DNA of 64,000 bases from Podarcis erhardii. Its lineage: Eukaryota. The stretch is from the NCBI GenBank assembly GCA_964252035.1, contig OZ176207.1; one strand, written 5' to 3'. The notes under the pieces are model-generated. The model saw only the letters and a list, made by a program, of their open reading frames with translations, was not told the origin of the DNA and searched no databases. The position numbers were made by a program, and so were the translations under genes. Positions 1-38,800 of the stretch are shown here, piece after piece. Numbering within the stretch: the first letter of the stretch is position 1; each line of letters opens with the position of its first letter.

Positions 1-288
1 CCGCCTCCCACGGTTGAGTCAGACTCATGCTGGTAGCTTCGAGAACACTGTCCAACCATCTTGTCCTCTGTTGACCCCTTCTCCTTGTGCCCTCAATCTT
101 TCCCAACATCAGGATCCTTTCCAGGGAGTCTTCTCTTCTCATGAAGTAGCCAAAGTATTGGAGCCTCAGCTTCAGGATCTGTCCTTCCAGTGAGCACTCA
201 GGGCTCTTTCCTTAAGAATGGATAGGTTTGATCTTCTTGCAGTCCATGGGACTCTCAAGAGTCTCCTCCAACTCCATAATTCAAAATC
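1..288 (-). mobile_element. Bov-B (RTE) LINE 3' fragment, cut by the window edge
   Basis: Nearly the same sequence as the Bov-B 3' region at ~53750-54040 (ctcatg..tagcttcgagaacactgtccaaccatcttgtcctctg). Confidence 0.88.
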
Positions 289-401
289 ATATAACAGAGC
301 TTTTAACCTGATCTTAAATTTCTTTTTTTCCCCCTGAACCACACTGATTTTCTCCAGTAATGGTTGCGATATTTCTTTGTTGCATTTCGTATTATTTTCA
401 G

Positions 402-566
402 GTTATGAAATTACTGGCATGGAAAATCTCCCTAAAGGACCAGGGATTATTATTTATCATCATGGAGTTGCTCCTCTCGGCTATGCCTTATTTGTGGCTA
501 GATATTTTTTAGAGACGGGGAGAGGGTGCTTTTCATTAATTCATCATGTCGCGTATTGGATACCAG
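402..566 (+). CDS. TMEM68: Paralog A catalytic-motif exon (165 nt)
   Basis: Acceptor ttttcAG at 400-401, donor GTaaat at 567; same length as the equivalent exons of B and C. Confidence 0.92.
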
Positions 567-3500
567 GTAAATTATTTAAATTTAAATCATGCTTTTTTAC
601 TTAAAACATGTAAAATATGACATAAAACAATGCTATAAGCTATGAAAAAAATGCTTTAAATTATAAAGCTGTATATGAGGAAAGCAGGTAAAAACAATTG
701 ATAAATAAAATAGCAGCAACAGGTGAAATAGTTTAGTTAGTGCAGATGAAGATACTTTCACACCAAGTCATTGCTAGTAAAAGAGAATGAATGCAGGATG
801 AATAATTATTTCCAGTTCAAAACTGAGTCAGCAGAAATGGTCTCCATGAAGAAATGCTGTGCTTTTCTGCCTACATTCTTCCCCAGAGATCTAAAAACTG
901 AGGAATCTGGATAATGTCATCTGATTCCTATGCTATGACTACAAGCTCTCATGTAATAATTGCTGTTCACTTTAATACCAGAACAGGGAAAGGCGTAGGC
1001 TTTGGGGTGTCTAAGTTGATGATTTCCTCAAGTACAAAGAGTTTTGCAAAGTTCAGTCATTAGTAAAGATGGGATATTCCTTACTGGAAAGAACAACGCA
1101 AAGTATGGGAATCTGCTTGGGAGCATCTGCACTAGCAAACCACCTGTGCAAAATCCTCTGTATTCAAACACCACTGGGTGGCAGCTGGGATGCAGTGGGA
1201 GCTACAGCTAAGGAAAAGGGCAGAAACCCAAGTGAAGCCCAAAAGACATGTCCGTGGCTTTCATAGCAAGTCCAACCTATCACCAAATCTGCACACAGAT
1301 CCCAGAAAACATGGCCCCACCCAAACACATAACCAATCAAGCACTCCCACACACATCTTTTATGCCCCCATGTGACACTGCAATCAAACACATGTGGCAC
1401 CCTTGCTGTAGTGTTCATGGCCCTCCACTGCCACTCCCCCCACATCATCTTCCTCTGCACGCACACAGCAGCCACACCAGGAAACTATGACATCACAGAA
1501 AGGTCATTTAAAGGAAGGAAGGAAGGAGGCCAAAGAGGCCCAGTAGCACAGAGCGCTGTTTGGAGTTTTTCCACTAGGTTAATTAATGCAGCATATAACC
1601 TCCACCCATATATCTGTGTACCAATCTCTGCTGGAGGTGGCGGTTTTCCATCAGCATAGTCTCCTCAGTTCCTTCTGTGTATCTCCTCCCCTCGCCTCCC
1701 GTGTGTGTGTCTACTGTATCCAAAAGCTCTGTACCCTAAAGGCATTGAAATTCCCCATCCATGAAATCATAGTTGAAATGGATGGCAGAGAGCTATGCTT
1801 GTGATCCATAATAGTGCAATATCTTTGGAATAATGGCACTTGTATTGTATCCACAGTATTTCCTAAATAAGTTTCACAAAAAACAGCATTCTTCTATTTG
1901 GAGCTTATTTTTTTCAGGGCTGCAGATGTTTTATTATGTGATCAGGTTGAAATCTTACAAGAAAGCTGAAATTGTGGAAATAATGAAGAAAGGCCATTTA
2001 CTGGGCATTGCACCTGGTGGAGGTAGAGAAGCACTGTATAGTCACGATTACTGCATAATGTGGGGTAAACGCACAGGTTTTGCTCAGGCAGCTTTGGAGG
2101 CGAAAGTGGTGAGTGATCTTTGTGCAATCTGCATTGCCTTCACGATTATCCTAGATAAGACGTAATGTGTTGACATCCTTGATCCAGCATCCAAAAAAGC
2201 TGAGGATGGCAAATATCCTGTTTGGGGGTCAAATGATATCTGGAGTGCCACAGGTCTCCCCACCCCTGCTTTAAAACAAACCTACTGAAATTCATGACAT
2301 TTAAAAAAGAAAAGCATTTTCCTTTTATCTTTCTTTTTATATATAATTTTATTTTAAAAATTTGTTTTAATGTTTAAAATACTCATTTTACATCCTTAAG
2401 ATATCAATGACTTCCTTTCTTCTCCTTTGATAGTTCATTTTACATATCATAAATCCTTGCATATTTTACAAAAACTATACTATTCAGTTTTCCATTATTG
2501 AATCCATCAAAACACATTACACTGCAGAATTTATCTTAATGCTGCCAGTCATCATCTATTTCAAGATCCTTCTCATAATATGTCTGGAGCACTCAGTCTT
2601 TGATATTTCTAGAATAAAAAAAGAACCATACAATCTCCTGGAAATGTTTTCTTCTTAGCATACGGGGATTTAACCCTGAAAGCATGATCAATAGCTTGAT
2701 GTACCTCCTGCTTTTGAGTCTCAAGAAGATTTGCAAGTGCCTCAATTATTTTATCCCTTATTGCTTCACCAGATTGCTGAGCAATAGATCTAAATCATAA
2801 AAGCATCTCTTTTTGCCTCAATTCAATTAAAGCCAAATTGTCTGCCAATAGTTCCCGAGATGCTATAGCTGCCGCCAGTTGAATCCAGGGGGGAGGAGTA
2901 TAAAAGTTTGAATGCTTTTTCTTGAAAAAGAAAGTTTTCAAAGTTCTTATCCCCCCCGTCCCCCTCCTTTTATTTCCGATGGCAGACTTTCTTTGTTTCC
3001 TTCAATGCTTCAGCCATCTGGTTCCCATGCAGGATAGTCACCAATTCTAGAGAAGACTCCCCTTTTGTTCTCCTGGAAGTTCGCCAAATTAATCCAAATG
3101 CTAAAGACACTTGAATAATAAATCCCCTTTTCCTTGGTTTTATTTTCTGGGAAATCTGCTAATCAAAAACTTGACCTGATTGAGCAAAACCAATGTGATT
3201 TTTGGATTCAGCGCATCAGATTCGTCCTAAATCAACTGAAAAAACGCAGACAACAAATTTGTTGTTGACCAGTGTAATAAATCCCTTTTTCCTTCGTTTT
3301 ATTATCTGGAGCCCAGAGATGACAGCTTGACAGCCGGGTTAGGCCAGCACCAAATGGAACCTCAGACCTGTTGGGAACTCGTTTTTGACTTCCACAGGAG
3401 CCCTCAGAGTCCTGGTCATCCCCAAGACCTTTTTTGGGTGCTCGTTGCCTACGAGCTGCCGCCAAACTCCAAAATGCAGCGGACGGTTGGCTGAACCTGG

Positions 3501-6500
3501 CTTCCTTTCCCCCTCAGGGCAAACCAGGAAATTCTTTTTTCCCCTTCAATTCCTGAAAATCTGGAGGACAGCTTCTGAATTTCTTCATCTGAGATATTTG
3601 AATAAATGTGTCAGGAATTTTAAAGCCAATTACATTATCATTTATGAGTTGCTTCTCATTATAATCTCAGATGTGAAGCATTCTTCATAGTCCATAACAA
3701 AAATAAAGGCAGGATGGTTTGGACAAAATAATTATCCACTCCTCACCTTTCTTTTCATGTTTGTTTCATCTTTTATTTTTTTAGCCCATCATCCCTATTT
3801 TTACACAAAACATTTGTGAAGCATACAGGACCATTGGAAAGACAAGTAAGTTAAATACCTTGGTTAATCAAGAGATCTCAGGCAATATACATTTTAATAC
3901 TATAGAATGATCTTTTAAAAAGAATATCTATTTACTACTCACGAATAGATTTTATAGGGACATGGGTGGCGCTGTGGGTTAAACCACAGAGCCTAGGACT
4001 TGCCAATCAGAAGGTCGGTAGTTCAAATCCCCGTGATGGGGTGAGCTCCCATTGCTTGGTCCCTGCTCCTGCCAACCTAGCAATTTGAAGGCACGTCAAA
4101 GTACAAGGTAGGTACCGCTCCAGCGGGAAGGTAAACTGCGTTTCCGTGCACTGCTCTGGTTCACCAGAAGTGGCTTAGTCATGCTGGCCACATGTCCTGG
4201 AAGCTGTCTGCGGACAAACGCCGGCTCCCTCGGCCAATAAAGCGAGATGAGAGCCGCAATCCCAGAGTCGGTCACAACTGGACCTAATGGTCAGGGGTCC
4301 CTTTACCTTTACTTAATATATTTTATTCCATGTCCACTTATCTGCAAAACTGTGCTGCCTGCCTCAGTACTGAGTGAACATGCCCTTGCTTAGTTTTCTA
4401 TTAGATTTAACAGAAAGCTATAATCGATAAATGTGGGAGCAACCCTAAAATGGAGGGGAACTGAACAGGAAACATACCATATTCTGTAGTCTATTGTACA
4501 CAACTTATGACTGATTGCAAAGAGCTGAGAAGAGCTGACTGAATATCTTGTACAGTGGTACCTCAGGTTAAGTACTTAATTGGTTCTGGAAGTCTGTACT
4601 TAACCTGAAGCGTTCTTAACCTGAAGCAGAAAGTAATGGAAAGTGGATTGATCCGCTCCAGATGATGAAAAAACACCCCCTAAAATAGCAATTTAACACA
4701 AATTTTACTGTTTCACAAGACCATTGATCCATAAAATGAAGGCAATAATCAATGTACTGTACTATAAAATAAATAAGACAGTATTTTAGATGAAAAGAAT
4801 TAAAATTTATTTCCAAACTCACTGTTTGGAGCGGGCTCAGGGTCCTCTTCCACAATCACAATTGGCTTGGCTTTTGGCATTCGTGGAGGCCTCAGAGAGC
4901 TCCTGGAGCCCAGTCGCAGAGCCTCTGCAGCCACCATGGATGTCGGGGCTTGGCTCCCGGCATTCGCGGAGCCGCTCTAGGCAGCGCAGATGTCAGGGCT
5001 TGGTTCCCTGCATTTGCAGAGGCCCCTGACAGCTCCGTAGGCTCTGCCGATGTCTGGGTTTGCCTCCAGGCAATGTCCTCCGAGAGCTTGGAAAACTTAC
5101 TTCCGGGTTACAATCCTTCGTAACCCAAAAAAACGTAAGTTGAAGCGCTCGTAACCCGAGGTACCACTGTATCTCTTTTCCCAAGCACTCATATTATTTA
5201 ACTCTTCCTCTCTTCCTATTTATTGCAATTGCTAAACACTGAGAATTTCAACTAATTTCAGATTTGATATGGTGTCGCTTTCCTTCAGAATCTTCTTCCA
5301 TTTCATACACAGGGCTGACAAAATGGCTGTATGATAAAACTCGATGTATGCTTCTTCCCATTTACGGAGGGTTTCCAGTGAAATTGAGGACATTTATTGG
5401 AGAACCCATCCCATATGATCCAAATATAACAGCTGTAGAGCTGGCTGAAAGAGTAAGTTAACTCTAAACTTGGAAGTTTAAAAGCAGAATGTTTCTTTTC
5501 CTCTTGGTTTCTCTCTCTTTCAGCTCTAAATTGTATTGTACATATTGATTTCCTCATTCTATATGACCTGATATAGGGTTCATTATATATACTTTTGTGC
5601 ATTATGCCCATCACTCAATTTCCCCTTTCCTTAACTTGTTGAGACTAATTAAATGGGGGGGGGGGAACTATGTGGTACAAAGATAGATCTGCTCATGCAA
5701 TGGGATTTCTTCTTCCCATTATACTAGGGTGGACTATACAAAATAATCAAATAATAGATCTTATTCTAATTGCTCCTCATGAAAATTTTGGTCAATTGCA
5801 TAAAAAGTTGTTGAGCTGAGCTTCTTTGGGCCATTGGTCAGAAAGTTGAGATTTGGGGGGGGGGCGGTTGCCCTCTCCCCACCCCAACTTCCCACAGGCG
5901 CAAAACAGAACCAGAGCCACTCACGTAGGCACCTGAAACAGCGCACACACAAATTCCCCCCCCCAACTCGGATATTTCCTTAAAATGGAAAAAAGAAACC
6001 CCCCAGATGGCCCCAGAAGGACCAGTCTGGGATTTCCCAAACATATGGCAACCCTACACAATGTGCCCCAGAATTTGCCTGACAAGGTGGCTCCAAGCCA
6101 CCCTAGTGCTAATTTTTGAGGATATGGAGAGGGTTGAAGAGGAAGACAATTTATTGTACATGTTGATATATGTTGCATGTACACACTGATGTGTGTTTAA
6201 GAGAGCATTGGATACAGCTTTGTTAAACGGTGCCATAATTCCTGACCAACTACCAAGCTATCAACTCTGAACCTGCAACACATATACTGTAATTTGTTAT
6301 ATTTCATGCATCAGGAAGCTCCTATATGAGATGCCGTTTCACTGAATACAATGTCAAACACAGATACCATTTGTATGGTATTACATTGCATGACTTATTC
6401 TACCTGCTCCTGCAGGGGATGATACACTTTCCCCCTTCCTCCAGGAAAACATTGGACTCTGAATCCCAAAGGGAGGGGGCTAAGGGGAGGAGCATGTAGG

Positions 6501-7228
6501 GTCCTGGTGGCTAATGGGAACAGGGTGGGAACATTGTTTAGTATGCCTGATCCTTCTCCAAGCACTTTCTGCTTGTTTACTTGCTGCATCAAGCTTCAGG
6601 TTTTGATTGCCTGTTTAAAGGGGCAGATAAGAAATTTCTTTCTGCAAGGGGTTATGCCTTGGTTGTCCTGAGGTTCACTCCTTTTATCCTACATTGTAAC
6701 AACCATGCAAGGTAGCTACTGTGTACAAAGCAGCCCAAGGCACATATGTTTGATTGTTTCTCTGCCATTCTCATACAGTGCTTTTGGTAAACATACAGAG
6801 AGTGGGCTGGATTCACTGAGAGATGAGCAGTTTCCTAGTGGGGGTTCCTCACCCTGGCTGCTCTGGCCCAACCCTCCATGTTGAAGAAACCACTTTTGAG
6901 GGTTGAGAGACAAGGACTCTCATGATGCAACACATCTCTGTGTACAAAGTCAGTTGTGTATCCCAGAAAGAAGTCACATATTGTGCTTCTATAGCTGGAA
7001 TAAATGGGTTGCCTCTGGTTCTGATCCCTTTAGCTTTTTCCTCACAGATATTAATAACTGTGAATACCTAATTTGCAATCTATTCCTATAACACAATGTA
7101 TTCCTCTGGTTTTCTTTCAACAGGCGAAGACTGCACTTGAAAATCTTCGGGATAAACACCAAAAAAGGCCAGGAAATATATTAAGAGCTCTATCAGAACG
7201 ATTTGATAAGCATTACAAAGCTAACTAG
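402..7228 (+). CDS. TMEM68: TMEM68-like paralog A (5'-incomplete; exons 402-566, 1918-2108, 3785-3845, 5313-5452, 7124-7228)
   Basis: Five GT-AG exons splice in frame to GYEITGMENLPKGPGIIIYHHGVAPLG...GHLLGIAPGGGREAL...GFAQAALEAKV-PIIPIFTQN...YGGFPVKLRTFIGEPIPYDPNITAVELAER-AKTALENLRDKHQKRPGNILRALSERF*. This is collinear with TMEM68. The first coding exon lies upstream of the window. Confidence 0.93.
1918..2108 (+). CDS. TMEM68: Paralog A exon (191 nt) containing PGGGREAL
   Basis: Acceptor ttttcAG at 1916-1917, donor GTgagt at 2109; one codon shorter than the 194-nt exons of B and C. Confidence 0.92.
2335..3560 (-). mobile_element. Degraded L1-clade element carrying ORF1 (HAL1-like); boundaries approximate
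   Basis: The minus strand reads LALIELRQKEMLL*FRSIAQQSGEAIRDKIIEALANLL...IDHAFRVKSPYAKKKTFPGDCMVLF, an L1 ORF1 coiled-coil/RRM pattern with stops. An A-rich tail follows near 2335-2390. Confidence 0.6.
3785..3845 (+). CDS. TMEM68: Paralog A exon (61 nt) PIIPIFTQNICEAYRTIGKT
   Basis: Poly-T tract plus AG at 3783-3784, donor GTaagt at 3846. Absent from the ORF track; read directly from the sequence. Confidence 0.92.
3957..4313 (+). mobile_element. Sauria SINE
   Basis: tRNA-like head gggacatgggtggcgctgtgggttaaaccacagagcc and tail gacctaatggtcaggggtccctttacctttac; matches the two other copies in the window. Confidence 0.9.
4553..5169. mobile_element. Tc1/mariner (Tigger-like) MITE
   Basis: TIRs CAGTGGTACCTC...GAGGTACCACTG with TA target duplication at 4551-4552 and 5170-5171. 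Confidence 0.88.
5313..5452 (+). CDS. TMEM68: Paralog A exon (140 nt)
   Basis: AG at 5311-5312, donor GTaagt at 5453; encodes LTKWLYDKTRCMLLPIYGGFPVKLRTFIGEPIPYDPNITAVELAER. Confidence 0.93.
7124..7228 (+). CDS. TMEM68: Paralog A last coding exon (105 nt including TAG)
   Basis: cAG at 7122-7123; AKTALENLRDKHQKRPGNILRALSERFDKHYKAN*; candidate polyA signal ATTAAA at 7295-7300. Confidence 0.9.
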   Translation, partial: AKTALENLRDKHQKRPGNILRALSERFDKHYKAN

Positions 7229-7541
7229 TCCATATAAAATAGTTGCAGTGTTCATGAGAAGGTGTCTGTAATAGGAAGCATTAATAATTATGTTATTAAA
7301 GCTAAGTTGATATACACAGGATTGTGCTGGATTTTATATGAATTATTTGGAAGGGTCCCTGGCTCAGTAGCTCAGCTGTGTGTGCAGAAGGTTCTACGTT
7401 TTTGAAGACGTACAAGTGCTTTTCTGCCCTATCCTGCAATATACCCAGAATTCCCCTTTTTGGGGAACTTGCACTAGTAGAGGCAGAATCGAAGAGTATA
7501 ACAAGTAGGCGAGTGTTTAACTAAACGTGAAATAATATTAC

Positions 7542-15604: not shown

Positions 15605-15899
15605 ATGCTACATACAACTATGACATACTCTACATGCCTTAAGTATCTGATGGAAGAATGGATTTTTCTTGAATATCTCCCATATGTGATCATCTGTTCA
15701 GTAGTGCTGGTGTTTATCAACATCCTGTTATTTTTTACAATTCCTACATGTGTGCTGCTTCTTCTTTACCTTTCTTCTTTGGTCCTCTTCATCTATGAGA
15801 GGACACATAAACTAAAAGAAGCTTATTCCAGTAAAGCATGGGATGGTGCACGACTAATTATAACATTCATGTGGGATAGACTTGGAAGATATTTGAATG
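15605..15899 (+). CDS. TMEM68: Paralog B first coding exon (acceptor at 15583-15584, exon begins 15585)
   Basis: TYSTCLKYLMEEW...LKEAYSSKAWDGAR...YLNG; donor GTaagc at 15900. Confidence 0.88.
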
Positions 15900-18800
15900 G
15901 TAAGCATGTTTCATCTTCGTCTTCTGATTTGTATGTTGTCTTTCCTTAATTAAAACCTTGCTCAAGGCAACTTACAACATGAGAATATTTACCATAATTA
16001 CAAACAAAACCAAACTAGTTATCAACGTTTAGCGCTGCTCAGCCCTTGCCACCAGGCAAGCGCTCATGTGCAGGGCAGGGGTGAGGTGAAGGAAGGTCAA
16101 GAGTATTGTCTGCGTTCTCTTGCAGCCAGGTGTTGTGTGCTGGGTGGGAAAGGGGCGCAGAGAGTGCCCTTCACCCTCTGCTCCCCAGACCTTGCCACCG
16201 CTGTGCCGGCACTCACACAATGGGCAGGGGCAGGGCGTGGATAGTGTGTCATTTGAGGGTTCACAACCCCCCAAATTGTGGTTTTGGGGCAATGGCCCCC
16301 TTGGCACCTCACACTACACCACTGGAATCTACTATAGTTCAGTTACCCATTCAGAATTACTTAATTTGAAATAACAACCCTTTTGCACTTTGTATTCCAA
16401 ACAGGTTACGAACTACATGGCATAGAAAACCTACCAGATGGACCAGGCCTTATAATATTTTACCATGGAGCAATTCCTATAGATTATGGTTACTTTTTAT
16501 CCAAACTTTTTCTTCTGAAGCGCCAAAGTTGCTATACAGTAGTTGATCGTTGTGTTTTCAAACTTCCAGGTGATGCTCTTTGTTAATTTAAAACTGATTT
16601 CAGGTAATGTGTGTAATACTAAAATATACCCCATCTTCCCCAAATGGTTTAGGAAGCTTCAGCCTTTTGCAGCATTAGTTTCCTAGTGAGGAGCGGTTAA
16701 TGGAGACACAGGTTAGTAGGTTGCTAACTACCAGCCATCAAAAGTTTTCTCTGCTTGTTTCAGGAAGCAATGCCTAGTCCTCAGTGGTCATGAAAAAGCA
16801 TCTTATATCAGTAAATTAAAGAAATGAATAGAGGGAGTTAGAATCTGCTGGATGAGGCCAATGGCCCATCTACTCCAGCATCCTGTTCTCACAGTGGCCA
16901 GTCAGGTGCCTAAGAGAAGATCCAAGCTTGTGCAGGATCACTCTCCCCACTTGTGATTTCCAGAAACTGGCAAGATTTTATCTATTATCAAAATGGTAAA
17001 ATCTATAAATTTCCCTCTGCTTAGCATCAGGGGTAATGCTGTTTACACTGGCTAGATAAGTCCTTCATTAGATAAGGCAGTTTTAATGCCTAGCATTAAA
17101 TATTTGAAGCACAAGATTCAGTGTTGTGAGTATGGGGGTTTAGCCTGCTTGATGCCTGAGTCCCTTCTGAGTTCCCGGGGTCCTAGATCCAGCAAGGGTT
17201 AAAATGAAGGATTCCATTGTTGAACTAGCTGGGCAAGCTTTTTGATGAGTTAATGGCCCTTAGTGTAGCAAGGGAAATTGCTCTATGCCAGAGAGCAAAT
17301 TGGTGGGTCCTTGGCCAATGGAAAACAAGCCTTTAATCAAAGGTTCTATGCCAGGTCACCAGGTCATGTGACTGAGTGGACTGGGCTTAAGATCCAGTCT
17401 AAGTTCCCCGCTCCCCATCCCACCACATCCTCAGAACACCCTTTTGGGGTGACTTTCAAAAGCCTTTGCTCAGTCAGTCTCAGTTCAGCCAGGATGAGCA
17501 AATTATGCTGGCATATCTTCAGCTGAGCCAGGTTTGGGGCTGTTTATTTGTTTATGTCTTCTTGTTTATATTTTATAGGTTTAAAAAACTTAGGTGCTGT
17601 AATGTGGCTTTTACCTGGTACACAGCAAGAGTGTGTAAATGTTCTAAAAAATGGTCATCTGCTGGGAATTTCACCAGGGGGAGTTCGAGAATCACTATTT
17701 AGTGATAAATCATACAAACTTATATGGAAAAATCGGAAAGGTTTTGCTCAAGTGGCTATAGATGCCAAAGTGGTAAGTACTATTCATATATGATTATACA
17801 TTTGGACACTTCTGAATGCATATATGTTATCAAACAAAATAAGAAGCTAAACAGCTAGAAGACATGTTATGTTTTTTAACATAAAAATGTTGTTAATCAA
17901 TAATCTAAAATTATAATTTTCATGTGCATGGGATTCACTTAATATAACTAAGATCCATGCTGTAAAATGAAGTAATAGCGATCTACCAAACAATTATATT
18001 TAAACTATTACCTGTGGTTATGCCTGTTAGCTGCAGAGAAGATCCAAGATGCCTAAGTATCAGTCTGTAACTGATTTCAGGGCTCGAGGCCACTGTCCTT
18101 CTGAAGTAACTTGATTATCAAAGGGGATCAGGACTTGCGCTGGTCCTTCCATTTGCATTAATTCTCATTTCTCGGTCTATAAGATCCACCTTGTGAAGAT
18201 AAATCTCCATTCTCTAAAAGAATCTTTTGAGGAGTTTTCCCATGTAAATATCACATAAATTAATGATTGCTGCATGCAAGCACTACTATTGTGACCTCTG
18301 TTTTCTTCAGAACAAAAGGAAGACTACAAGGCACTAGTTAAATTTCAAACTTCAGCTCTGAATAACTTTATTGACTTGATTAAACCTTCTGAGTAAGTGA
18401 TATGCTTTTTAGCAAGGCAACTTAAAATATTTGAACCTATGTACATTTTATAGTTAATACGGTACAGTACAGAGAAACTATGGCCCTCCAGTTGTTTAGT
18501 TGAATTCTAACTTCTACAAGCCCCACCCTGCGTGGTTAGAGGTCAGGGTGGATGGGAGTTGCAGACCATCAACATATGGAAGGCCACATCTTCCTGGTCC
18601 TACACACAGCTGTTCTGTACATTTCAGAGTTAAATAGTGGCACACTAGAAATTCAAATTAAATCCAGACATGTGGAAAATTAAGCATCTTAAAAAAGTAA
18701 CTTTCTGCTTCAAGAAGTGCTTTGAGCGGTGAGAAATAACTGATTAAAACATACCCATTTGGAATACTGTAAAAAGGTATGATATAATTCTGCAGAAGTC

Positions 18801-21800
18801 TGGCCCTTTGGAATCCCATTCTAGTGCGGGAGAGAAAAAAATGGTAAAACATTTAAAATGAAACAATGGGTCTTAATTGCATTTTATTGTCTTCTGCTCT
18901 TGAAAGTGCTAATTGAAGTCTTCTGCTCTTGAAAGTCAGTGATTGTGCTAATATTGACTGAATCTAGAAAATTACAACTACCCAATAGACAAAGATCATC
19001 ATATTAGATTAGCCTGGGAGGATGCAGGCATTTGTTTCTGAAAATAATATATGACCTGTAAAAAAAGGCCCAAGCTATTCACCATTTCCCTATTTTTCAC
19101 ATATTTATAAACAACAAAAATCCCCTGTGCTGCAAACAGAACAATCTGACAATCCAAAAGCAACACAATAGGCTAATAATATGATTACAACACTTTTATA
19201 TCACTACTGAATTGTATCTTAATTTACAATCAGATAACATACAATATATACATGGTGACACCAACTAATATGAGTTAAGAAAATGTCCCAAAGTAAGGGA
19301 TTTTTTGGCTAGTATAACATCACAAAGAATCACTCAAGCCTGTGGCAACATGCCTTCCAAGGTAAGTGTAAAGTCAGGCAAAGCACAACATATGCAGTGT
19401 TTTGCAGGGAATTTGTTGAAGCATGTTGGTGCTCCAAAATCAGCAGTCAGATTGTCACATATCTACAGCATGGTCTTCATATGACAAATGGTTACATAAA
19501 ATGTCTACCTTAGGAACACGCATTACCTGACCAAAAGAGCCAAGGCTCCCCACCCACATGAAGAGGGCGGGAGATTATTCCTGCTCCTTTATCTAGTCTA
19601 GCAAAGCAAGTTTCATGTGATGTCATCACATTAGCAAGTTTTGCAACCTCTTGGCCAACCTTTGCAGAACGAGGGAACTTGCAACATGCCATATCATGTC
19701 TTTGAGCCTCAATGTGCAGTTTATAGAAGCTTTAGAAGGGGAAGAAGAATAAAAAAGAGAAGGGAAAGTAGAACTTTTGGTGAGGAGAGTAAAACAAGAC
19801 TCTGAAAAGGGTCAATAAGTTGAGCTTAAATCCTGACAAGACAGAAGCACTGTGGGTGAGCCATTCCTGTGTTTGGGAGACTGGTTGTGTTTGGGAGGCG
19901 GGTTGCAGTTCTGCTACATATTCTGGGGGGTACTTCAAGATCCAGCTAGGGTAGGAGTGATTTTTCTCCACTTCTGTTGGTCTGTTGTCTGTGACCGTTC
20001 CTGAATTGGGATAGCTTGACTACAATTTTGAAACATTGGCAATTTTGACTATATAATATTGTAATGCACTATTTGTAGGACTACCCTTGAGGTTGGTTCA
20101 GAAATTGCAGCAAGTGCAGATTTCTAGAGCCTGGTTGCTGGCATCTAACAGTTGTGCTGAGGAAGCCACTGGCTACTAGTATGGTACCAAGTAGGACTGA
20201 GCAATATCTGGTTTTCAATATTGTGATATTTCACCAGCTAAACATTTGTTATATACTGATCTATCACAATGTATGAAATAAGGATGCAGCTATGTAGAGG
20301 CTTCATGATTTCCCCCGCACTGTGATTTTTGCGTAGTGCGCGCGCACACCCACACACACATTATTATTCGCAATATATTGCCAGGTCAAATATATTTTGG
20401 AGCCAAGATAGACTGTAAGAGTGGTTTGCCAGCTGGGTGGGAACTTACAGAATTCCTTTCTGGTAGCATCAGCTACCTGTGTGTATATTTATTCTCAAGA
20501 TAAAGACTGAACTTTAAATATGCTAACTTTAACTATCATGTTTTCTCTCCTCCCTTAGCCCATCATTCCAATGCATACACAAAATGTTCGGGAAGGATTT
20601 AGGATCTTTGGACGAACAAGTAAGGCATGCAGATATTTAGCTTGTACTTTTAAAATGTTGTGTTCTCCAGCCTGCAGCTCAGTGCCTGCTTCAAAAGACT
20701 TGCATAGCACTTCCTTACACATGAAAATAAATCCTGTTCATTAAACAGAGTGGGGAAGCTTTTGCTAATGCGTTTGTTGGAGCAGCAAGCTCACATGCAT
20801 GCTAGGAGCTTCATGGTTGGTCTGGACATTTGTTTTAATTTTGGTACTAATGTGGACTTCTAGTTTTAACTTAAAATCTTTAAAAACTATTCCTTCTCCT
20901 TAAGTACTGGGAGTCATCACATCTTGGCTATGGGCAGAGTCAATTGGTCAGGATAACACAGGCAGGGCTAGGAAGCTTTTCCAACCAGCCCTGGACCTCA
21001 CTGTTGAGCTCACCAGAAGAAGATAACAGCCAGTGTTTTCTTTTCGCTTCCCTTTAATTCAAAGGTGTTCAATGCAGAAACATTCTTCTCAGGAAAGAGA
21101 ATAAACAGGATATACTGCATGGCTCCGCCACTTTCTCCTCACAGCTGAGAAAGGTGTTTTCTTGGGGCACAAGCCAAGTGCTCAAGTGGCTTTCTGCCTC
21201 CTTCTGCCAGCCCACACTTGCAGGGAACAAGCCAGCCTCAATACAAAGTGGCCAATAGGTTCTCTTTCCCTCCTTTGTCCTAAGCAGGGAATGAACCTCT
21301 GAGTAAGGGAGCCAGCTGGTTGGCCATCTTTTGCATTACCTCAGCAGCCACAGAAACCTCATCTCATGGCACCTAGTGCCCATGGATGCACAGAGAGCAG
21401 AAGAAATTAGTGGGTAATTCCCTTAAAAAGTTGGGGGGCTCTCTTGTTTTACACCTTTATTTTTAAACTAAAAACTATGAAAAGCAACAAAGTTGGCTTC
21501 TGCCTGCTTTACCTCGTTACCTGAAAGAGGCAGAGCCCAAACACTTTGGAGAAAGATAGCTCATTCTCTCTCCTTCTAAAAAAGCAAATTCCCTTTTACC
21601 TTATGTGATATGGGACTGGAATGTGGCAAGAGCTAAATAGTAGTACTGCTATTGATCTCAGCGGAATATAGCTTTGAAGAGTTTAGTATCAATTAAAGCT
21701 CTAGCTAAAACCTTTATAGCAGGGGTCAGAAAACCTTTTCTGCAGGGGGCCAGTCCCCTGTACCTCTGACCTTGTGGGGGGCTGGACTATATTTTGAAAA

Positions 21801-23180
21801 ATAATAATGAATGAATTCCTATGCCCCACAAATAACCCAGAGATGCATTTTAAATAAAAGTACACATTCTACTCATGTAAAAACACACTGATTCCCGGAC
21901 CGTCTGCCGGTTGGATTTAGGCGATTGGGCCGGATCCGGCCCCTGGGGCTTAGTTTGCCTACCCATGCTTTATAGCTTTTTGAGCTTAAACATACATGAT
22001 TTGAATGTACAGTACAAAAGTATTAAAGATGTGTATAAACCTGTGCCTTTGGAATAGGATTGATAAGATTCAGATTAAAAATGAATGTACATATGGATAT
22101 CCCAAAAACACTGAATTCAGAAAATGGTCTCAGGCATGTAGAACCCTTCACATATGTACAATGCTGCATATTTACGAACAGATGTTTTAATTTCTGAAGA
22201 GCTACTTTATTGATCTGCAATGGAAGCTGTAAACCTTAATTAGAAGTCTTTCTGGGTGCAGGCACAGCAGTGAATTCAAATCCACAAGGACTCCCTCAGT
22301 AACTTCCAACAGGATGCTTTTGTGTGCTCATTGAAGTAAACAGCAAAACCCTTGTAGTCAGAGTACATCAATATATGTATCCCAGCAGTGGAGCAATGGA
22401 CTGATCCTAGGGAAAAGAATTTTTAGATTAAAAAAATGATTTTCCTTTTTTTCCCCCAACATAAAGGGCACTCACATTTTTTTAACAGAAAGAAAACTGA
22501 TATCTTGCTTGTTTCTTTTTTGCCCTCTGGATTTTAAAAAGGATTCACTAGGTGGTGTTTTGAATCTCTTCGAGTGCCTTTTCTTCCTGTATATGGTGGA
22601 TTTCCAGTCAAATTTCGTACATATATTGGTAAACCCATTCCATATGATCCAAATATAACAGCTCCAGAGTTAGCAACAAAGGTATGTTTTCTGCTAAACC
22701 AATATAAAACACCAGCAATACTGTTTCATTATAAATGTGCACTCAAAATATTCCTATTTAAGAGAAATGAGTTGTTAGCTTTAATAGCTGGTAATACATT
22801 TACTAAGCCCTCTATTAAAACAGTTTGAAAAGAGAAAGCGTTTTTCTAAAAACATGTAGGCTGCAGTGCAGTATTGTCACCTTTAGAACTATATTGCTAA
22901 GCCATTTGGAGGTTAGAGCATTATTAAACACAGGCTCAAGTCCTAGAATTCTAGTTTTATTTGTACATGACTATTGCAGCCTTTTATTTGTTTGAAAATA
23001 ATATCTATATTTGTTTGAACAGAGAGAATCTGTCACAAGGTTTATGTCAGGAGTGGGTAGAAAATTGAAACTGACCATGATCTGTCACCTGGGTATCTAG
23101 TACCTAGTGCTGGTTGCTATGATTTTCTTGCAAGGAAAGTTGGTCTGATCAAGCAAGGCATTTATTTTGTTCTTGATGAA

Positions 23181-23222
<42 letters not shown>

Positions 23223-23345
23223 TGACTTGACAAAGATTAGGTTGACCCTCATTTTTAGCTCCTGAGTATGCATACGTTATTTGCAAATCAAAATGTGTTG
23301 AACTTTCAAATACTTATTGATTAGGGAAACTTGAGATGGTGTTTT

Positions 23346-23376
<31 letters not shown>

Positions 23377-23928
23377 GCGTTATTGTTTTAAATAGCATTA
23401 GTTCAATGTGGCTTATTCTACTCAGTTCCTATGACACTGGACAGTATATGATACAATATAATAAGGTTATCAGTTAGGCATACAATGTAATAAGGTTAGG
23501 GATACAATGTAATAAGGTTATCAGTTAGGCATTCTACTTGACTACAATTGCCATAATCTCTACTCACCGGCTAAACTGGCTGGTGCTGAGAGTTGCAATC
23601 CAATAACTTCTGGAGGGCATTGGATACCCCTGAATTAGGGTGAGGCCAGATCCTAGTCGTCATCCCCATGAGCTGAAGGAGTTCAAATGAGGAATCATTG
23701 TTTGTATATAGATTTGTAGACTTCATATGCATTTCACTATAATTTTTCAGGTGGATTAATTTACATGCCCATGGAGCTGTAGTAGTGAGATGCATAACTT
23801 TCCCCTCTTTTCCTCATTTTCAGAGTAAGGCAGCACTCCAGGCATTAATTCAAAGACACCAGCAAATTCCTGGAAACATCTATGATGCTTTAATGGAAAG
23901 ATTTCACAAAGAGAAGAAAAAACCCTGA
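15605..23928 (+). CDS. TMEM68: TMEM68-like paralog B (exons 15605-15899, 16405-16569, 17579-17772, 20559-20619, 22542-22681, 23824-23928; 960 nt, 319 aa)
   Basis: Six exons splice in frame. Hydrophobic N-terminal segment, FYHGAIPIDY motif, SPGGVRESL, GFAQVAIDAKV, YGGFPVKFRTYIG and PIPYDP are all present. The start is either ATG 15605 or ATG 15620 (better Kozak context). Confidence 0.93.
16405..16569 (+). CDS. TMEM68: Paralog B catalytic-motif exon (165 nt)
   Basis: cAG at 16403-16404, donor GTgatg at 16570; GYELHGIENLPDGPGLIIFYHGAIPIDY. Confidence 0.92.
16830..16975 (-). mobile_element. CR1-type LINE 3' end remnant
   Basis: ctgctggatgaggccaatggcccatctactccagcatcctgttctcacagtggcc resembles the squamate CR1 3' UTR (recognised from memory). 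Confidence 0.55.
17579..17772 (+). CDS. TMEM68: Paralog B exon (194 nt)
   Basis: tAG at 17577-17578, donor GTaagt at 17773; GHLLGISPGGVRESLF...GFAQVAIDAKV. Confidence 0.93.
19790..20200 (+). mobile_element. L2 LINE ORF2 remnant
   Basis: Degenerate NKLSLNPDKTEALWV and CNALFVGLPLRLVQKLQQVQ motifs. Confidence 0.65.
20559..20619 (+). CDS. TMEM68: Paralog B exon (61 nt) PIIPMHTQNVREGFRIFGRT
   Basis: tAG at 20557-20558, donor GTaagg at 20620. Confidence 0.92.
21720..21967. mobile_element. hAT-family MITE
   Basis: Termini CAGGGGTCAG...CCTACCCATG; 8-bp TSD CTTTATAG at 21712-21719 and 21968-21975. Confidence 0.85.
22542..22681 (+). CDS. TMEM68: Paralog B exon (140 nt)
   Basis: aAG at 22540-22541, donor GTatgt at 22682; FTRWCFESLRVPFLPVYGGFPVKFRTYIGKPIPYDPNITAPELATK. 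Confidence 0.9.
23183..23220. repeat. (GT)n microsatellite
   Basis: Perfect GT run. Confidence 0.97.
23347..23376. repeat. (TAAA)n microsatellite
   Basis: Perfect tetranucleotide run. Confidence 0.95.
23824..23928 (+). CDS. TMEM68: Paralog B last coding exon (105 nt including TGA)
   Basis: cAG at 23822-23823; SKAALQALIQRHQQIPGNIYDALMERFHKEKKKP*; AATAAA at 24103-24108. Confidence 0.92.
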   Translation, partial: SKAALQALIQRHQQIPGNIYDALMERFHKEKKKP

Positions 23929-35501: not shown

Positions 35502-35829
35502 ATGATAGGCCGAAATGAATCCTGTGGTGCAGAGCAGATGCCCATGTCTTACTTGACTTGCCTGCTTTACATACTGGAAGGATGGACTGGAGTCGAACAC
35601 TTGGACGAATATCTGAGTTACCTGGTCTACCTCACATGGCTCTTTGCACCATTGCTTGTAGCATTTTTACTTCCTGCACTCATCCTCATTCTTGTATATG
35701 TCAGCATTTTTATTCTTCATATTTACAAGTTACGGACACACCTAAAAGAGGTTTATTCAAATGATTTTTGGGATAGTGCAAGACTTGCAGTGTTAACTTT
35801 GTGGCATGTTCATGGAAGAATATGGAATG
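35502..35829 (+). CDS. TMEM68: Paralog C first coding exon (exon begins 35499)
   Basis: cAG at 35497-35498, ATG at 35502, donor GTaagt at 35830. Confidence 0.93.
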
Positions 35830-38800
35830 GTAAGTACATTTTTCTTATGTAGATGATATAAGCTAAATAGTCTTCAAGTATAAGGATACAAAATCCTATA
35901 CTTGTTTTCAGAAGAACTTTCCCAAGCATTTTTTTCAGTAGCACTGCATAAACTACTTTGTTATTACAGTTTCAGAGGTTCAGTACTTTTTTATTCCACT
36001 TCCTAATCAATCACATTCCTATATTCAGAATGTGTATGCGTTGTAAAAAAATTTGTTTGATTAAAGAGGAATTATTCCACTGTAGAAAGTAGCTTTATAT
36101 TTTACATTCACGTATGTTTGAGGGAGGCAAATGATAATAAGGTTTATGTTAAAGGAGCTCTTTCTGAGTTGTTCATTGCTAACTAGTTGCACCATGTATT
36201 TCCCAACCTCACTGGACTTTCTGGAGATCGTAAAAAGAAGCAAAAAACAAAATCATTTTGATTTTGCACCATCTATTACCCAGATGTGTGTTTGTGCACA
36301 CACCTCTTTGATGAGGAATGCATGGTGTGTGCATAGGAATGCATAGGCCTTTTCCTACAGGAAAGTGGAATTCTGTTGTGATTCATTCCTTTTAAGCAAG
36401 AACTGCACCAGTCTAAGAGGGTACATGAGATTCTCAAGACAATATAACAATAAACTCTTTAGCTTGTTCACTATAAATCTTGGACTACAAGGCTTTTTAG
36501 ACAAGCTTCTTGTTAGGGAGAAGTCTTGTAGAATAGACAATAATGGGGGTGCATCAGTGCTTTCCTTCCTTCTTCCCAGCTGCCAGAAATCAAGGTGTTC
36601 CTGTGAACTTTCAAAGAAAACAGGAACTTCACGTAATGAACTCTGTCTACTTTTCTTCTGCTTCAGACTACCTTAACTATTGTTTCCCAGTCTGGTATGT
36701 CATACTTATTGTCTGTTACTTTCCTGTGCTGTACAGGCACTAATATTTAGCAACTGTATTCAGGTGACGTAGTTTGTCCTTGAAAGACAGATTTAGTCTG
36801 TGTGAATATTTAAATATATTTTGAATTTATATGCCCAATGATGTGGGGTTATTTTTTTTTAATAAGTAAATCGGATTTTTTACAAAAGGTTCTAAAAGAT
36901 ACCGTGAAAGTCAATAATGAAACAATTAAAGGCTTTCTAGGCATGGTTGCTAGACTTCTTCCCTTCTTTTTGCTTTAACAATGTATGCTAATTGTAGCAA
37001 GTATATTTTAGAAAAAAATGAATAGCATGAGATTGCCTCTGAGTCTGACTAATGGAATTGGTGGCAAAGTATAGTCAGAAAAACTATAGTCTCTTTGCTT
37101 GAAAAACTACATGATGACCAGGAAAACCAGTTACGTTGTTTCAAGCCTGCAATACTATGTCTACTCATTCCCATTCAAGTCCCATTCAATTCAGTGGGGC
37201 TTTACTCCTAGACAAATGGGGTTCCAACCTCAGTCAGTATTTCTGCTCCTTCACTTGCAAATGATAATGAATAGCTTCACACTTATTTCTGTTCAAAACC
37301 TAAGCAGCCTAATTAATCCTTCAAATATCCCATAGCTCAGGGGAGGACAGACTTCAGGCTTGTGGGATTTACATTTTTTTCTATTAAAACCTGAAGATCT
37401 ATTAACCAGAGCCAGGTACAAACAGACACAAGTACTTAGAATTAATAAATTCTGAACCCAGTGACTTTGAGCATCAGAACAAAACTGAACTCTTCAGTCC
37501 CTCCACACACTAATGCATCACTTTCTGCTTCATTTCAGCACTATGCAGTAATGTGGGTGTGGGAGTCATTGCTAAACAATTGGGGATTTGGGAATCCTTG
37601 CCAATCTACTTAAATTCCCCAGAAATCTGCTGGTAGATTTTGCTCCACAGTGTCCATCAATGCCCTAGCCTAGCCTAACCTGTCATATGGAGGGAAATAG
37701 TTAAATAAAGGAAAGTATGCAATTAGGGCAGGAAAGAGGAACCTGTGGCCCTCCAGCTGTGGTTGTACTTGCAAGTTCTCTAAGCCCCAGCCAGCATGGG
37801 CTGTGGGTGTGGATCATGGGGGTTGTAGTTAACATTTGAAGAGCCTGAACTTTTCTGTCCATGACATAGGCCATGATATAGAAATCTTCTGTATTTCTGT
37901 TCAAGCCAGCAAAACCTCTTAGCCACAAATGCTGTGACCCAAATTCTAAGAAGTTGGTTATTCAGGATTAGAGTGGCAAACTGCAAGAACCACCCACATG
38001 TGTTGCCTCTTGATTCACTGGAATCTTTGATTGTCCTTGAATCTTCCTGCCACAATTGACATCCTCTCCTGCCACACCAGTGTGGCAAGCCACACCGCTT
38101 GAGAACCACTGACTTAAACCATCGGTCTAATAAGGCACATATATATGCTTTTGCCAATATATTGGTCTAGCATTTTATGTCATTCTCTTCCCCCATCCCA
38201 AGCTTCACAATTATGTGGACCTCCAGAGGAAAGAGTACAGAAAAACTAGTGGGGAAGATGGAAGAATGACTGTGGAAAGTCCAACAAGTTCAGCAAGTGT
38301 GTAATTATAGCAATTATCCACATTCATTTAGGGAAGTGGGGAGAAGCCCTCTTTATGGAAAAAGGCATTTTACAACTTTTAAGAATTAGAATAAAAATAA
38401 TTAATGGACTGAGTAAAGGTAAAGGGACCCCTGACCATTAGGTCCAGTTGTGACTGACTCTGGGGTTGCGGCGCTCATCTCGCTTTATTGGCTGAGGGAG
38501 CCAGTGTACAGCTTCCGGATCATGTGGCCAGCATGTCTAAGCCGCTTCTGGCGAACCAGAGCAGCGCACAGAAACACTGTTTACCTTCCCACTGGAAGGT
38601 ATTTATCTACTTGCACTTGGATGTGCTTTCGAACTGCTAGGTGGGCAGGAGCAGGGATCGAGCAACAGGAGCTCATCCTGTCACGGGGATTTGAACCACC
38701 GACCTGATCGGCAAGTCCTAGGCTCTGTGGTTTAACCCACAGCGCCACCCGCGTCCCTGTAATGGACTGATATATACAAATATTAAGTTGTGTATTATCA

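What the first reader, a model, noticed from the sequence alone, without database searches (positions are those of the whole stretch)
455..555. Paralog A has lost the catalytic-motif Asp (YHGAIPID becomes HHGVAPLG) yet stays intact
Seen: His codon CAT at 461-463 is kept, but the Asp position six codons later is GGC (Gly) at 479-481; B and C have HGAIPID and HGATPID. The Tyr before the His has become a second His, and the downstream xDH motif (C: ADHF) reads IHHV, so a second conserved Asp is also gone. Other exons show PGGVRE to PGGGRE with a one-codon deletion, and QNVRE to QNICE. Known: the His/Asp pair of this motif is the proposed catalytic dyad of TMEM68 and related PlsC-fold acyltransferases. 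Inference: A is either a pseudoenzyme (lipid binder, TMX1 decoy or regulator of B and C) or an enzyme with rewired His-rich chemistry, loosely like the HPHG motif of DGAT2/AWAT enzymes.
Basis: partly seen in the sequence, partly recalled or inferred. Interest (0 to 1): 0.8.

Follow-up and report, generated by a model that had tools for sequence, protein, structure and literature searches.

The report
Lizard DIESL-like enzymes without catalytic aspartate
A wall-lizard copy of the fat-making enzyme TMEM68/DIESL really has lost one of its two proposed catalytic residues, and it belongs to a lizard-specific, fast-evolving gene array that selection keeps intact, so it is a working protein with a remodelled active site and not a dead gene.

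Summary

The change is neither an assembly error nor a rare allele. The same GGC and CAT codons sit in the syntenic Podarcis muralis ortholog (window about 95% identical), in sister paralogs and in Zootoca.

A is not simply one of three genes. It is the last member of a lacertid-specific tandem array of about 0.4 Mb. At least 15 annotated copies from Podarcis, Zootoca and Lacerta carry His-His...Gly, arising in two or more changes at this codon.

Overall dN/dS in the array is about 0.95. Even so, no exon has an indel or stop, where about 27 of each are expected under neutrality.

Site models show 32% of codons under strong purifying selection, and the catalytic His and motifs III and IV are invariant across the lacertid copies. 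About 12% of codons are under positive selection (omega 4.7; LRT p = 3e-19).

Asp-less and Asp-keeping copies evolve alike (p = 0.84).

A is therefore a functional PlsC-fold protein for which the Asp became dispensable. Whether it still transfers acyl groups (my preference, about 45%) or only binds lipid (about 33%) needs an assay. Exon 1 lies outside the window.

The parts
402..566 (+). Paralog A exon 2 (phase 1 in, phase 1 out). It holds motif I and motif II.
   Evidence: It is 95.6% identical to P. muralis L002 11107-11271, with 7 nonsynonymous and 3 synonymous differences.
455..481 (+). Motif I, Y-H-H-G-V-A-P-L-G: extra His at 458-460, catalytic His at 461-463, and Gly (GGC) at 479-481 in place of the dyad Asp.
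   Evidence: The same codons occur in the P. muralis and Zootoca copies.
533..556 (+). Motif II region, S-L-I-H-H-V-A-Y. The Asp of xDH is replaced by His (CAT 542-544).
1918..2108 (+). A exon 3, with motif III PGGGRE (2013-2030) and the one-codon deletion relative to B and C.
   Evidence: The exon plus its flanks are 100% identical over 248 nt to P. muralis.
3785..3845 (+). A exon 4, with motif IV PIIPIFTQNICE (Arg to Cys in QNxRE, a change shared by all lacertid A-type copies).
5313..5452 (+). A exon 5 (the FPVKLRTFIGEPIPYDPNITA block).
7124..7228 (+). A exon 6, ending ...SERFDKHYKAN and a TAG stop. An AATAAA/ATTAAA hexamer lies at 7295.
15605..23928 (+). Paralog B, six exons, dyad intact (His 16464-16466, Asp 16482-16484), motif II VDRC.
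   Evidence: It groups with Hemicordylus TMEM68-like.
35502..49618 (+). Paralog C, six exons, dyad intact (His 43010-43012, Asp 43028-43030). It groups with bird TMEM68 and TMEM68-like proteins, so it is probably TMEM68 proper.

Best explanation
Window 402-7228 holds exons 2-6 of the 3'-most member of a lacertid-specific tandem array of TMEM68/DIESL-like, PlsC-fold acyltransferase genes. Exon 1 lies about 1.4 kb upstream of the window.

In the ancestor of this array the constraint on the dyad Asp was lifted. The codon then changed at least twice, GAC to GGC (plus Asn and Glu in single copies). In 14 of the 15 Gly copies, the otherwise family-invariant Tyr before the catalytic His also became His (TAT to CAT).

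Shown: the change is fixed and shared across genera, and A is intact wherever it can be seen. The family is kept open by selection. The catalytic His, motif III (PGGxRE) and motif IV (PIIPxFTQN) stay invariant, and no family codon is called positively selected within them. About 12% of codons are under positive selection; they lie in the N-terminal transmembrane helix and in the helices flanking motifs I and II. Losing the Asp brought no further relaxation.

Inferred: A encodes a functional ER-membrane protein whose lipid pocket is diversifying. It still uses the conserved His for acyl transfer without the classical Asp partner. That could be a His-only mechanism, or His assisted by the new neighbouring His or another residue, as in other members of the superfamily that place the helper residue elsewhere. 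It probably has altered acceptor or acyl specificity.

I put about 0.85 on 'functional, selection-maintained Asp-less protein'. Within that, I put about 0.45 overall on 'still catalytic'.
For: Sequence and gene model.

Synteny: the window is collinear with and about 95-96% identical to P. muralis OZ076961.1 (L002). The ortholog there has an intact canonical 313-aa ORF including exon 1, and the same HHGVAPLG.

Same motif elsewhere: P. muralis P0091 and P0112, the second L003 gene, and Zootoca P0092.

Family table: the Asp is kept in nearly all of the other 92 family members, and Gly occurs only in lacertid copies.

Tree and AU test: the best tree implies two changes, and strict monophyly of the Gly copies is rejected at p = 0.019.

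ORF maintenance: 0 exon indels against 26.9 expected from intron gap density. 0 stops against 26.7 expected on the 8-taxon tree, and against 6.7 in A's own clade (P = 0.0013).

Site models on 10 CDS: M0 omega 0.97; M2a beats M1a with 2dlnL = 85, p = 3e-19; classes are omega 0.06 (32%), 1 (56%) and 4.7 (12%). The test remains significant exon by exon with exon-specific trees.

Core positions: of 65 family-wide core positions, A deviates at only four (Y129H, D136G, L187M, K295R). Gly-type copies are barely more decayed than Asp-type copies once the two dyad-site changes are set aside.

Invariance: 24% of columns are invariant over a clade tree length of 4.38 substitutions per site, including the His and motifs III and IV.

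Branch model: omega is 0.98 on Gly branches and 0.96 on the others, p = 0.84.

Structure: the AF2 model of P0091 has pLDDT 86.6, and its top PDB match is PlsC 5KYM at E = 3.7e-8.

Precedents: PatA uses His126 with a distant Glu200 (PMC8519569). DGAT2's HPHG needs both His residues (PMC3075658).
Against: The Asp is otherwise almost invariant across more than 90 vertebrate family members, which argues that it matters for the ancestral reaction.

A has also lost the motif II Asp and the Arg of QNxRE.

Overall omega is about 1. For A alone against its P. muralis ortholog, the data cannot exclude neutrality (omega 0.68, CI 0.27-2.39; P(no stop) = 0.31; P(no indel) = 0.02).

One Zootoca copy of the same clade is frameshifted.

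The RefSeq model of the P. muralis ortholog skips the canonical exon 1 and adds an unrelated exon.

No expression data and no activity data could be obtained. Only H130A, not the Asp, has been tested in DIESL (PMC10482677).

Gene conversion among paralogs (incongruent exon trees) can inflate site-model tests.

No model coordinates were available to measure active-site geometry.
Confidence: 0.45

Rival explanations
1. A is a pseudoenzyme: a stable, selection-maintained PlsC-fold membrane protein that binds lipid or acyl-CoA, or a partner protein, but no longer catalyses acyl transfer. Examples would be a sequestering protein, a scaffold, or a regulator of active paralogs or of TMX1.
For: One of the two proposed dyad residues is lost, together with the motif II Asp and the QNxRE Arg. 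The ORF and fold are maintained. The dyad position behaves as a neutral site in the whole lacertid clade, taking Gly, Asn, Glu or Asp. The Pfam acyltransferase score is lower than in Asp-type copies: 33-39 bits against 42-51.
Against: The catalytic His and motifs III and IV remain invariant although the family's omega is about 1. Gly-type copies show no extra relaxation relative to Asp-type copies. The near-constant pairing of Asp to Gly with Tyr to His at the neighbouring core position looks like remodelling and not random decay. There is no evidence of any kind for TMX1 or B/C binding.
Confidence: 0.33
2. This particular copy (A) is a young duplicate drifting toward pseudogene status. Its intactness reflects too little time, or gene conversion from functional neighbours, and not selection on A itself.
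For: A against its P. muralis ortholog gives omega 0.68 with CI 0.27-2.39, and only about 1.2 stop-creating changes are expected since the split. A Zootoca member of the same clade carries two 1-bp insertions in exon 2. The RefSeq model of the ortholog is aberrant. Exon 3 is 100% identical to P. muralis while exon 2 has 10 differences, a mosaic pattern consistent with conversion. Exon 1 is not visible in the window.
Against: There are no indels in 659 nt of exons, against 3.8 expected from A's own introns (P = 0.02). All splice sites are canonical. The ortholog has an intact 313-codon ORF. The clade holding A has 0 stops against 6.7 expected. A against its paralog P0091 shows 29 nonsynonymous and 3 synonymous differences (omega 2.8, CI 1.3-13.9), which is not a neutral pattern.
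Confidence: 0.15
3. The Gly codon is an assembly or sequencing error, or a rare allele.
For: None found.
Against: An identical GGC codon with identical neighbouring codons occurs in independent assemblies of P. muralis (four genes) and Zootoca (two genes). GGC also occurs in the second Gly clade from Zootoca and Lacerta.
Confidence: 0.01

Closest known systems
Human/mouse TMEM68 = DIESL (DGAT1/2-independent TAG synthase, PF01553)
   Same: A has the same six-exon layout as B and C, and lies in the same XKR-neighbouring locus as its P. muralis ortholog. It has the same PlsC fold (on the P0091 model), the catalytic His, PGGxRE, the RxGFA...VPIIPxFTQN block and the C-terminal helix. It retains 61 of 65 family core positions.
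   Different: The dyad Asp (D136 in human DIESL) is Gly. The preceding Tyr is His. The motif II Asp is His. QNxRE reads QNxCE. There is a one-codon deletion after motif III. The N-terminal segment is shorter. A belongs to a lizard-only array under positive selection, not to a single conserved gene.
DGAT2/MGAT/AWAT family (PF03982, HPHG motif)
   Same: Both have two His residues around the catalytic position, and both His residues are essential in yeast DGAT2 (PMC3075658). They share the RxGF...A...VP...F block. Pfam DAGAT gives near-threshold hits to residues 158-230 of the A-type proteins.
   Different: The motif is YHHG, not HPHG. The DAGAT score of 21.3 is below the cut-off of 22 and does not cover motif I. 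Phylogenetically A sits inside TMEM68-like. That DGAT2 lacks an Asp at the equivalent spacing is my recollection and was not tested here.
PatA (mycobacterial PIM acyltransferase) and LpxM: LPLAT-fold enzymes with a relocated or different acidic partner
   Same: Both are among the top fold matches. PatA's His126 is assisted by Glu200 from a distant segment (PMC8519569), and a Glu is listed as the catalytic residue in the LpxM entry 5KNK. This shows the fold tolerates other His partners.
   Different: They are bacterial, with about 10-14% identity.
Rapidly evolving tandem gene arrays in squamates (e.g. the Anolis TMEM68 paralog cluster linked to dewlap colour, bioRxiv 10.64898/2026.06.28.735067)
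   Same: Both are squamate-specific clusters of TMEM68 paralogs, with lineage-specific copy-number change.
   Different: That work reports an association signal at a cluster. It does not describe loss of catalytic residues or selection on the proteins, and it concerns a different squamate lineage.

Membership tests
TMEM68/DIESL-like acyltransferase (PF01553, LPLAT/PlsC fold) | Pfam PF01553 above the gathering score | tested here: met
   The full-length closest paralog P0091 (about 87% identical to A) scores 33.5 bits against a cut-off of 23. A's exon 2 alone gives no hit and exon 3 alone scores 14.3 bits. A itself cannot be scanned whole because exon 1 is off-window.
TMEM68/DIESL-like acyltransferase (PF01553, LPLAT/PlsC fold) | PlsC-like alpha/beta fold with N-terminal membrane helices | tested here: met
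   The AF2 model of P0091 has pLDDT 86.6 and pTM 0.83. Foldseek's top hit is PlsC 5KYM at E = 3.7e-8, followed by LpxM, PatA and GPAT.
TMEM68/DIESL-like acyltransferase (PF01553, LPLAT/PlsC fold) | Catalytic His of motif I | tested here: met
   CAT 461-463. The His is invariant in all 31 lacertid and outgroup sequences.
TMEM68/DIESL-like acyltransferase (PF01553, LPLAT/PlsC fold) | Dyad Asp six residues after the His (D136 in human DIESL) | tested here: not met
   GGC (Gly) at 479-481.
TMEM68/DIESL-like acyltransferase (PF01553, LPLAT/PlsC fold) | Motif III (PGGxRE) and motif IV (VPIIPxFTQN) | tested here: met
   PGGGRE at 2013-2030 and PIIPIFTQN within 3785-3820. Both are invariant in the lacertid clade.
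TMEM68/DIESL-like acyltransferase (PF01553, LPLAT/PlsC fold) | Phylogenetic placement and synteny with TMEM68 | tested here: met
   A is in tandem with B and C on one strand. It falls in a lacertid clade sister to the Rhineura TMEM68-like protein, inside the squamate TMEM68-like radiation. In P. muralis an XK-related gene model spans the locus.
TMEM68/DIESL-like acyltransferase (PF01553, LPLAT/PlsC fold) | N-terminal transmembrane exon present and open | not testable with these tools
   Exon 1 lies upstream of the window. The P. muralis ortholog has it intact at L002 9054-9333.
TMEM68/DIESL-like acyltransferase (PF01553, LPLAT/PlsC fold) | DAG/MAG acyltransferase activity; TMX1 binding | not testable with these tools
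   Needs an enzyme assay and co-immunoprecipitation.
DGAT2/MGAT family (PF03982) | Pfam PF03982 above the gathering score, and the HPHG tetrapeptide | tested here: not met
   The best score is 21.3 bits against a cut-off of 22, covering only residues 158-230. The motif reads YHHG.
Pseudoenzyme | Loss of a key catalytic residue with the fold and ORF kept under selection | tested here: met
   Asp to Gly. ORF maintenance and a purifying-selection class of codons.
Pseudoenzyme | Demonstrated lack of catalysis | not testable with these tools
   Needs an activity assay.
Unprocessed pseudogene | Disabling mutations (stop, frameshift, broken splice site) | tested here: not met
   None in exons 2-6, and all splice sites are AG/GT.
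Unprocessed pseudogene | Neutral evolution of the coding sequence | tested here: inconclusive
   For A alone, omega is 0.68 (CI 0.27-2.39). At clade and family level neutrality is rejected, both by the absence of stops and indels and by the site models.

The most novel reading that the evidence does not exclude
The Asp-less His-His active site (perhaps together with the clade-specific Cys in QNxCE) is catalytically competent. It would be a second, convergent, DGAT2-like or PatA-like solution within the DIESL family. It arose more than once in lacertid lizards and sits in a positively selected array that makes lineage-specific neutral lipids, for example skin or gland signalling esters or pigment esters.
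Probability: 0.3. Interest if true: 0.8.

Novelty: new variant of a known kind. Interest (0 to 1): 0.6.

Why it matters
DIESL/TMEM68 was recognised as a third route to triglyceride only in 2023. Its mechanism rests on a His/Asp dyad of which only the His has been mutated.

Here nature supplies a set of closely related, intact proteins that differ mainly at that dyad: Asp, Gly, Asn or Glu, with Tyr or His next to the catalytic His. All of them sit within one genome region and under one selective regime. That is a ready-made panel for asking whether the Asp is needed, and what the neighbouring His does.

It also shows that a 'housekeeping' lipid enzyme has become a large, positively selected tandem family in wall lizards and their relatives. 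This points to lineage-specific lipid chemistry that has not been described in the literature I could search.

Tried and rejected
(1) Assembly error or rare allele: rejected by identical codons in other assemblies.

(2) 'All copies are neutrally drifting pseudogenes', suggested by omega of about 1: rejected by the absence of indels and stops, and by the M1a/M2a site models.

(3) 'Loss of the Asp caused relaxation': rejected, since a two-ratio branch model shows no difference and core-position decay is similar in both types.

(4) Single origin of Gly: strict monophyly is rejected (p = 0.019). A clade of the Gly copies plus the Asn copy is not rejected (p = 0.094). One origin followed by a further change therefore stays possible, and I claim only 'at least two changes at this codon'.

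(5) A sign test for coupling of His(-1) with Gly: only two independent contrasts exist, so there is no power.

(6) PDB sequence search with P0091: no hit.

(7) Pfam on single exons is too weak to be informative.

(8) Two look-ups of encoding contigs (P0116, P0098) found nothing, so clade 2a has no CDS in the selection analysis.

(9) I could not get an ortholog of C as a purifying-selection control. I also could not get model coordinates to measure distances in the active site.

(10) My first splice mapper failed and was rewritten. My first exon 3 ends were 3 nt short and were corrected.

Full report
**What is in the window**

The window is lizard genomic DNA. Three TMEM68/DIESL-family genes lie in tandem on the + strand:
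- A: exons 402-566, 1918-2108, 3785-3845, 5313-5452 and 7124-7228. Its first coding exon lies upstream of the window.
- B: 15605-23928, six exons.
- C: 35502-49618, six exons.

Every junction is a canonical AG/GT. The exon lengths and phases match the RefSeq models of relatives that I mapped exon by exon.

**The observation**

In the frame starting at 404, A reads Y-E-I-T-G-M-E-N-L-P-K-G-P-G-I-I-I-Y-H-H-G-V-A-P-L-G-Y.
- CAT 461-463 aligns with the catalytic His of B and C.
- GGC 479-481 aligns with their Asp codons (GAT and GAC).
- CAT 458-460 replaces their Tyr.
- Motif II reads SLIHHVAY (533-556) against C's VVADHFVF.

The literature basis is right. Human DIESL's active site was identified as His130/Asp136, and H130A kills activity (PMC10482677). 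Mouse H129/D135 were proposed earlier (PMC5417663). Only the His has been mutated in those papers.

**Not an error, and orthologs share it**

A search of the representative protein library with A's exon 2, followed by a word-index search, found lacertid proteins with the same motif. Examples are Zootoca XP_060133804 and several Podarcis muralis 'DIESL-like' proteins.

The window is collinear with P. muralis OZ076961.1 at 38.385-38.413 Mb (window 1-18886 = L002 10706-28267). Identity is about 95-96%, so the window comes from another wall lizard or a close relative.

The P. muralis ortholog has the same CAT CAT GGA GTT GCT CCT CTT GGC. Using the canonical exons, it has a complete 313-codon ORF, including an exon 1 with ATG and a GT donor at L002 9054-9333. 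Expression, and exon 1 in this genome, remain untested.

**A is part of a much larger system**

The P. muralis genes I fetched span 37.95-38.41 Mb, and the Zootoca genes span 37.19-37.61 Mb of one chromosome.

In an 87-protein tree, the lacertid copies form one clade (28 tips) sister to the amphisbaenian Rhineura protein. This clade sits inside a broad squamate radiation of TMEM68-like genes. B and C belong to other, older clades, and C groups with bird TMEM68 and TMEM68-like proteins.

Across 92 other family members the dyad Asp is nearly invariant. Within the lacertid clade, 15 sequences from P. muralis, P. lilfordi, Zootoca, Lacerta agilis and the window have Gly. One has Asn, one has Glu and 11 keep Asp.

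Fourteen of the 15 Gly copies also have His instead of the family-invariant Tyr before the catalytic His. None of the Asp copies does.

All lacertid copies, Asp-type included, share the QNxRE to QNxCE change.

**One origin or two**

With the motif columns removed, the careful tree places A's clade (HHGVAPLG) as sister to the Asp-keeping clade (98/93 support). The other Gly clade (HHSIWLRG / HHxxILVG) lies elsewhere, next to the Asn copy. That implies two changes.
- The AU test rejects strict monophyly of the Gly copies (p = 0.019).
- It does not reject a clade of the Gly copies plus the Asn copy (p = 0.094).
- Both Gly clades use GGC and CAT, each one transition away from GAC and TAT. The codons between them differ strongly, so a shared short conversion tract is unlikely.

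I therefore claim at least two changes at this codon in the array, most simply two Asp to Gly events.

**Is it decaying**

Pairwise dN/dS within the array is high: pooled 0.89 (CI 0.67-1.22). The maximum-likelihood GY+F3X4 estimate is 0.94-0.97. dN is about equal to intron divergence. Taken alone, that looks neutral. Three results say otherwise.

First, exons carry no indels in four orthologous pairs, where the pairs' own introns predict 26.9 gap openings. They also carry no stops, where the codon model predicts 26.7 stop-creating substitutions on the 8-taxon tree. In A's own clade 6.7 are expected (P = 0.0013). Even with a three-fold lower indel rate, the indel result stays at P of about 1e-4.

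Second, I ran my own implementation of the codon site models. It reproduces IQ-TREE's M0 likelihood exactly. It shows strong heterogeneity:
- M1a improves on M0 by 137 in 2dlnL.
- M2a improves on M1a by 85 (p = 3e-19).
- The classes are 32% of codons at omega 0.06, 56% at omega 1, and 12% at omega 4.7.
- Gene conversion can mislead this test, so I repeated it exon by exon with exon-specific trees. It stays significant in every partition, from p = 2.6e-9 to 0.0035.

Third, conservation falls where an enzyme needs it.
- Of 65 positions that are at least 93% identical across the rest of the family, A differs at four (Y129H, D136G, L187M, K295R).
- Over a clade tree length of 4.38 substitutions per site, 24% of columns are invariant. 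These include the catalytic His, PGG..E and TGFA..A.EAKVPIIP.
- The sites inferred to be under positive selection lie in the N-terminal transmembrane helix (positions 40-51), at 81/85, just after motif I (122, 125), in and around motif II (135, 143, 144), and at 153-158, 194 and 244/246.
- Mapped on the AF2 secondary structure, these are helices flanking the catalytic centre. I infer, but did not show, that they line the lipid pocket.

**Did losing the Asp change the regime**

No. A two-ratio branch model gives omega 0.98 on Gly branches and 0.96 on the others (p = 0.84). Gly-type copies show no more decay at core positions than Asp-type copies, apart from the two dyad-site changes.

The simplest reading is that the constraint on the Asp was lifted in the ancestor of the lacertid array. 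The position then drifted or adapted (Gly twice, Asn, Glu), while the His stayed essential.

**What can be said about A itself**

Against its P. muralis ortholog, A has 12 nonsynonymous and 5 synonymous differences (omega 0.68, CI 0.27-2.39). It has no indel, where 3.8 are expected (P = 0.02).

Against its paralog P0091 it has 29 nonsynonymous and 3 synonymous differences (omega 2.8, CI 1.3-13.9).

This fits a functional, diversifying copy, but cannot by itself exclude recent relaxation. One Zootoca member of the same clade has two 1-bp insertions in exon 2, so the array does lose members.

**Fold and family**

P0091 is about 87% identical to A. Its AF2 model is confident (pLDDT 86.6, pTM 0.83). 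Its best PDB matches are PlsC (5KYM, E = 3.7e-8), LpxM, PatA and the GPATs. It passes Pfam PF01553 at 33.5 bits against a cut-off of 23, lower than the Asp-type copies at 42-51 bits. Pfam DAGAT stays just under threshold and covers only the motif III-IV region.

So A is a member of the TMEM68-like clade by descent and fold, but it fails one defining catalytic feature.

**Mechanism**

Two readings remain.

(a) Catalysis is retained without the classical partner. The superfamily offers precedents:
- PatA's His126 is tuned by a distant Glu200 (PMC8519569).
- A Glu is the catalytic residue named in the LpxM entry 5KNK.
- DGAT2 depends on two His residues in HPHG (PMC3075658).
- The near-constant pairing of Gly with a new neighbouring His, the invariant catalytic His and the intact motifs III and IV all favour this reading.

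(b) A is a lipid-binding pseudoenzyme. This is favoured by the near-invariance of the Asp elsewhere in the family, and by the additional losses in motif II and QNxRE.

I prefer (a) at about 0.45, against 0.33 for (b). I give 0.15 to A being a decaying copy. No evidence bears on TMX1.

**Novelty**

In the searchable library I found no paper on a lacertid TMEM68 expansion or on loss of the dyad. A 2026 preprint notes a TMEM68 paralog cluster in Anolis associated with dewlap colour. An Eremias study lists TMEM68 among sweep genes.

A withheld follow-up report exists for an overlapping stretch of this same window; I did not see it. The scan has no record of this dyad loss on other DNA.

**Limits**

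- The site models used 10 sequences, fixed relative branch lengths and naive posteriors.
- No CDS from clade 2a was available, and no ortholog of C was available as a control.
- I had no model coordinates, no expression data and no reads.

Noticed in passing
window 15605-17772 (B exons 1-3) against L002 24983-27166: Paralog B also changes fast between the window species and P. muralis. By eye there are about 11 nonsynonymous and 2 synonymous differences in 217 codons. Its motif II differs between the two species: VVDRCVF here and VADRFVF in P. muralis.
   Followed up: partly
L001 13323-13489 (Zootoca vivipara OY735909.1): The Zootoca copy behind XP_060133804 has two separate 1-bp insertions in exon 2. 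The RefSeq model reads through in the shifted frame, skips exon 3 and borrows a distant last exon. It is a broken array member annotated as a protein.
   Followed up: partly
L002 10001-10013 and 14313-14486 (equivalent to about window 3313-3486): The RefSeq model of the P. muralis ortholog of A (P0115) starts at a 13-nt alternative first exon. It also inserts a 174-nt exon with no family homology, while an intact canonical exon 1 (L002 9054-9333) is left unused. This hints at transcript-based evidence for an unusual isoform.
   Followed up: partly
window 1888-2135 against 372-596, compared with L002: Divergence from P. muralis is mosaic. Exon 3 plus its flanks is 100% identical over 248 nt, while exon 2 has 10 differences in 165 nt and none in its flanks. 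Exon-specific trees of the array also disagree: in exon 3, P0093 groups with P0096. Both patterns suggest gene conversion among paralogs.
   Followed up: partly
L002 and L003, minus strand, whole length: In P. muralis an XK-related (PF09815) gene model of 665 aa spans both loci on the opposite strand. The acyltransferase array therefore seems to lie inside an intron of an XKR gene.
   Followed up: no
window 54875-56017 (+) and 54227-54922 (-): A 380-aa ATG-started ORF with no Pfam match overlaps the end of a reverse-transcriptase (PF00078) fragment on the other strand. Related repeat copies occur at 1-400, 11412-11528 and 53680-54380.
   Followed up: partly
protein P0156 (Emys orbicularis) and P0095, P0104 (P. 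muralis, Lacerta agilis): There are further isolated departures at the dyad Asp: His in one turtle paralog, Asn in one lacertid copy and Glu in another.
   Followed up: no
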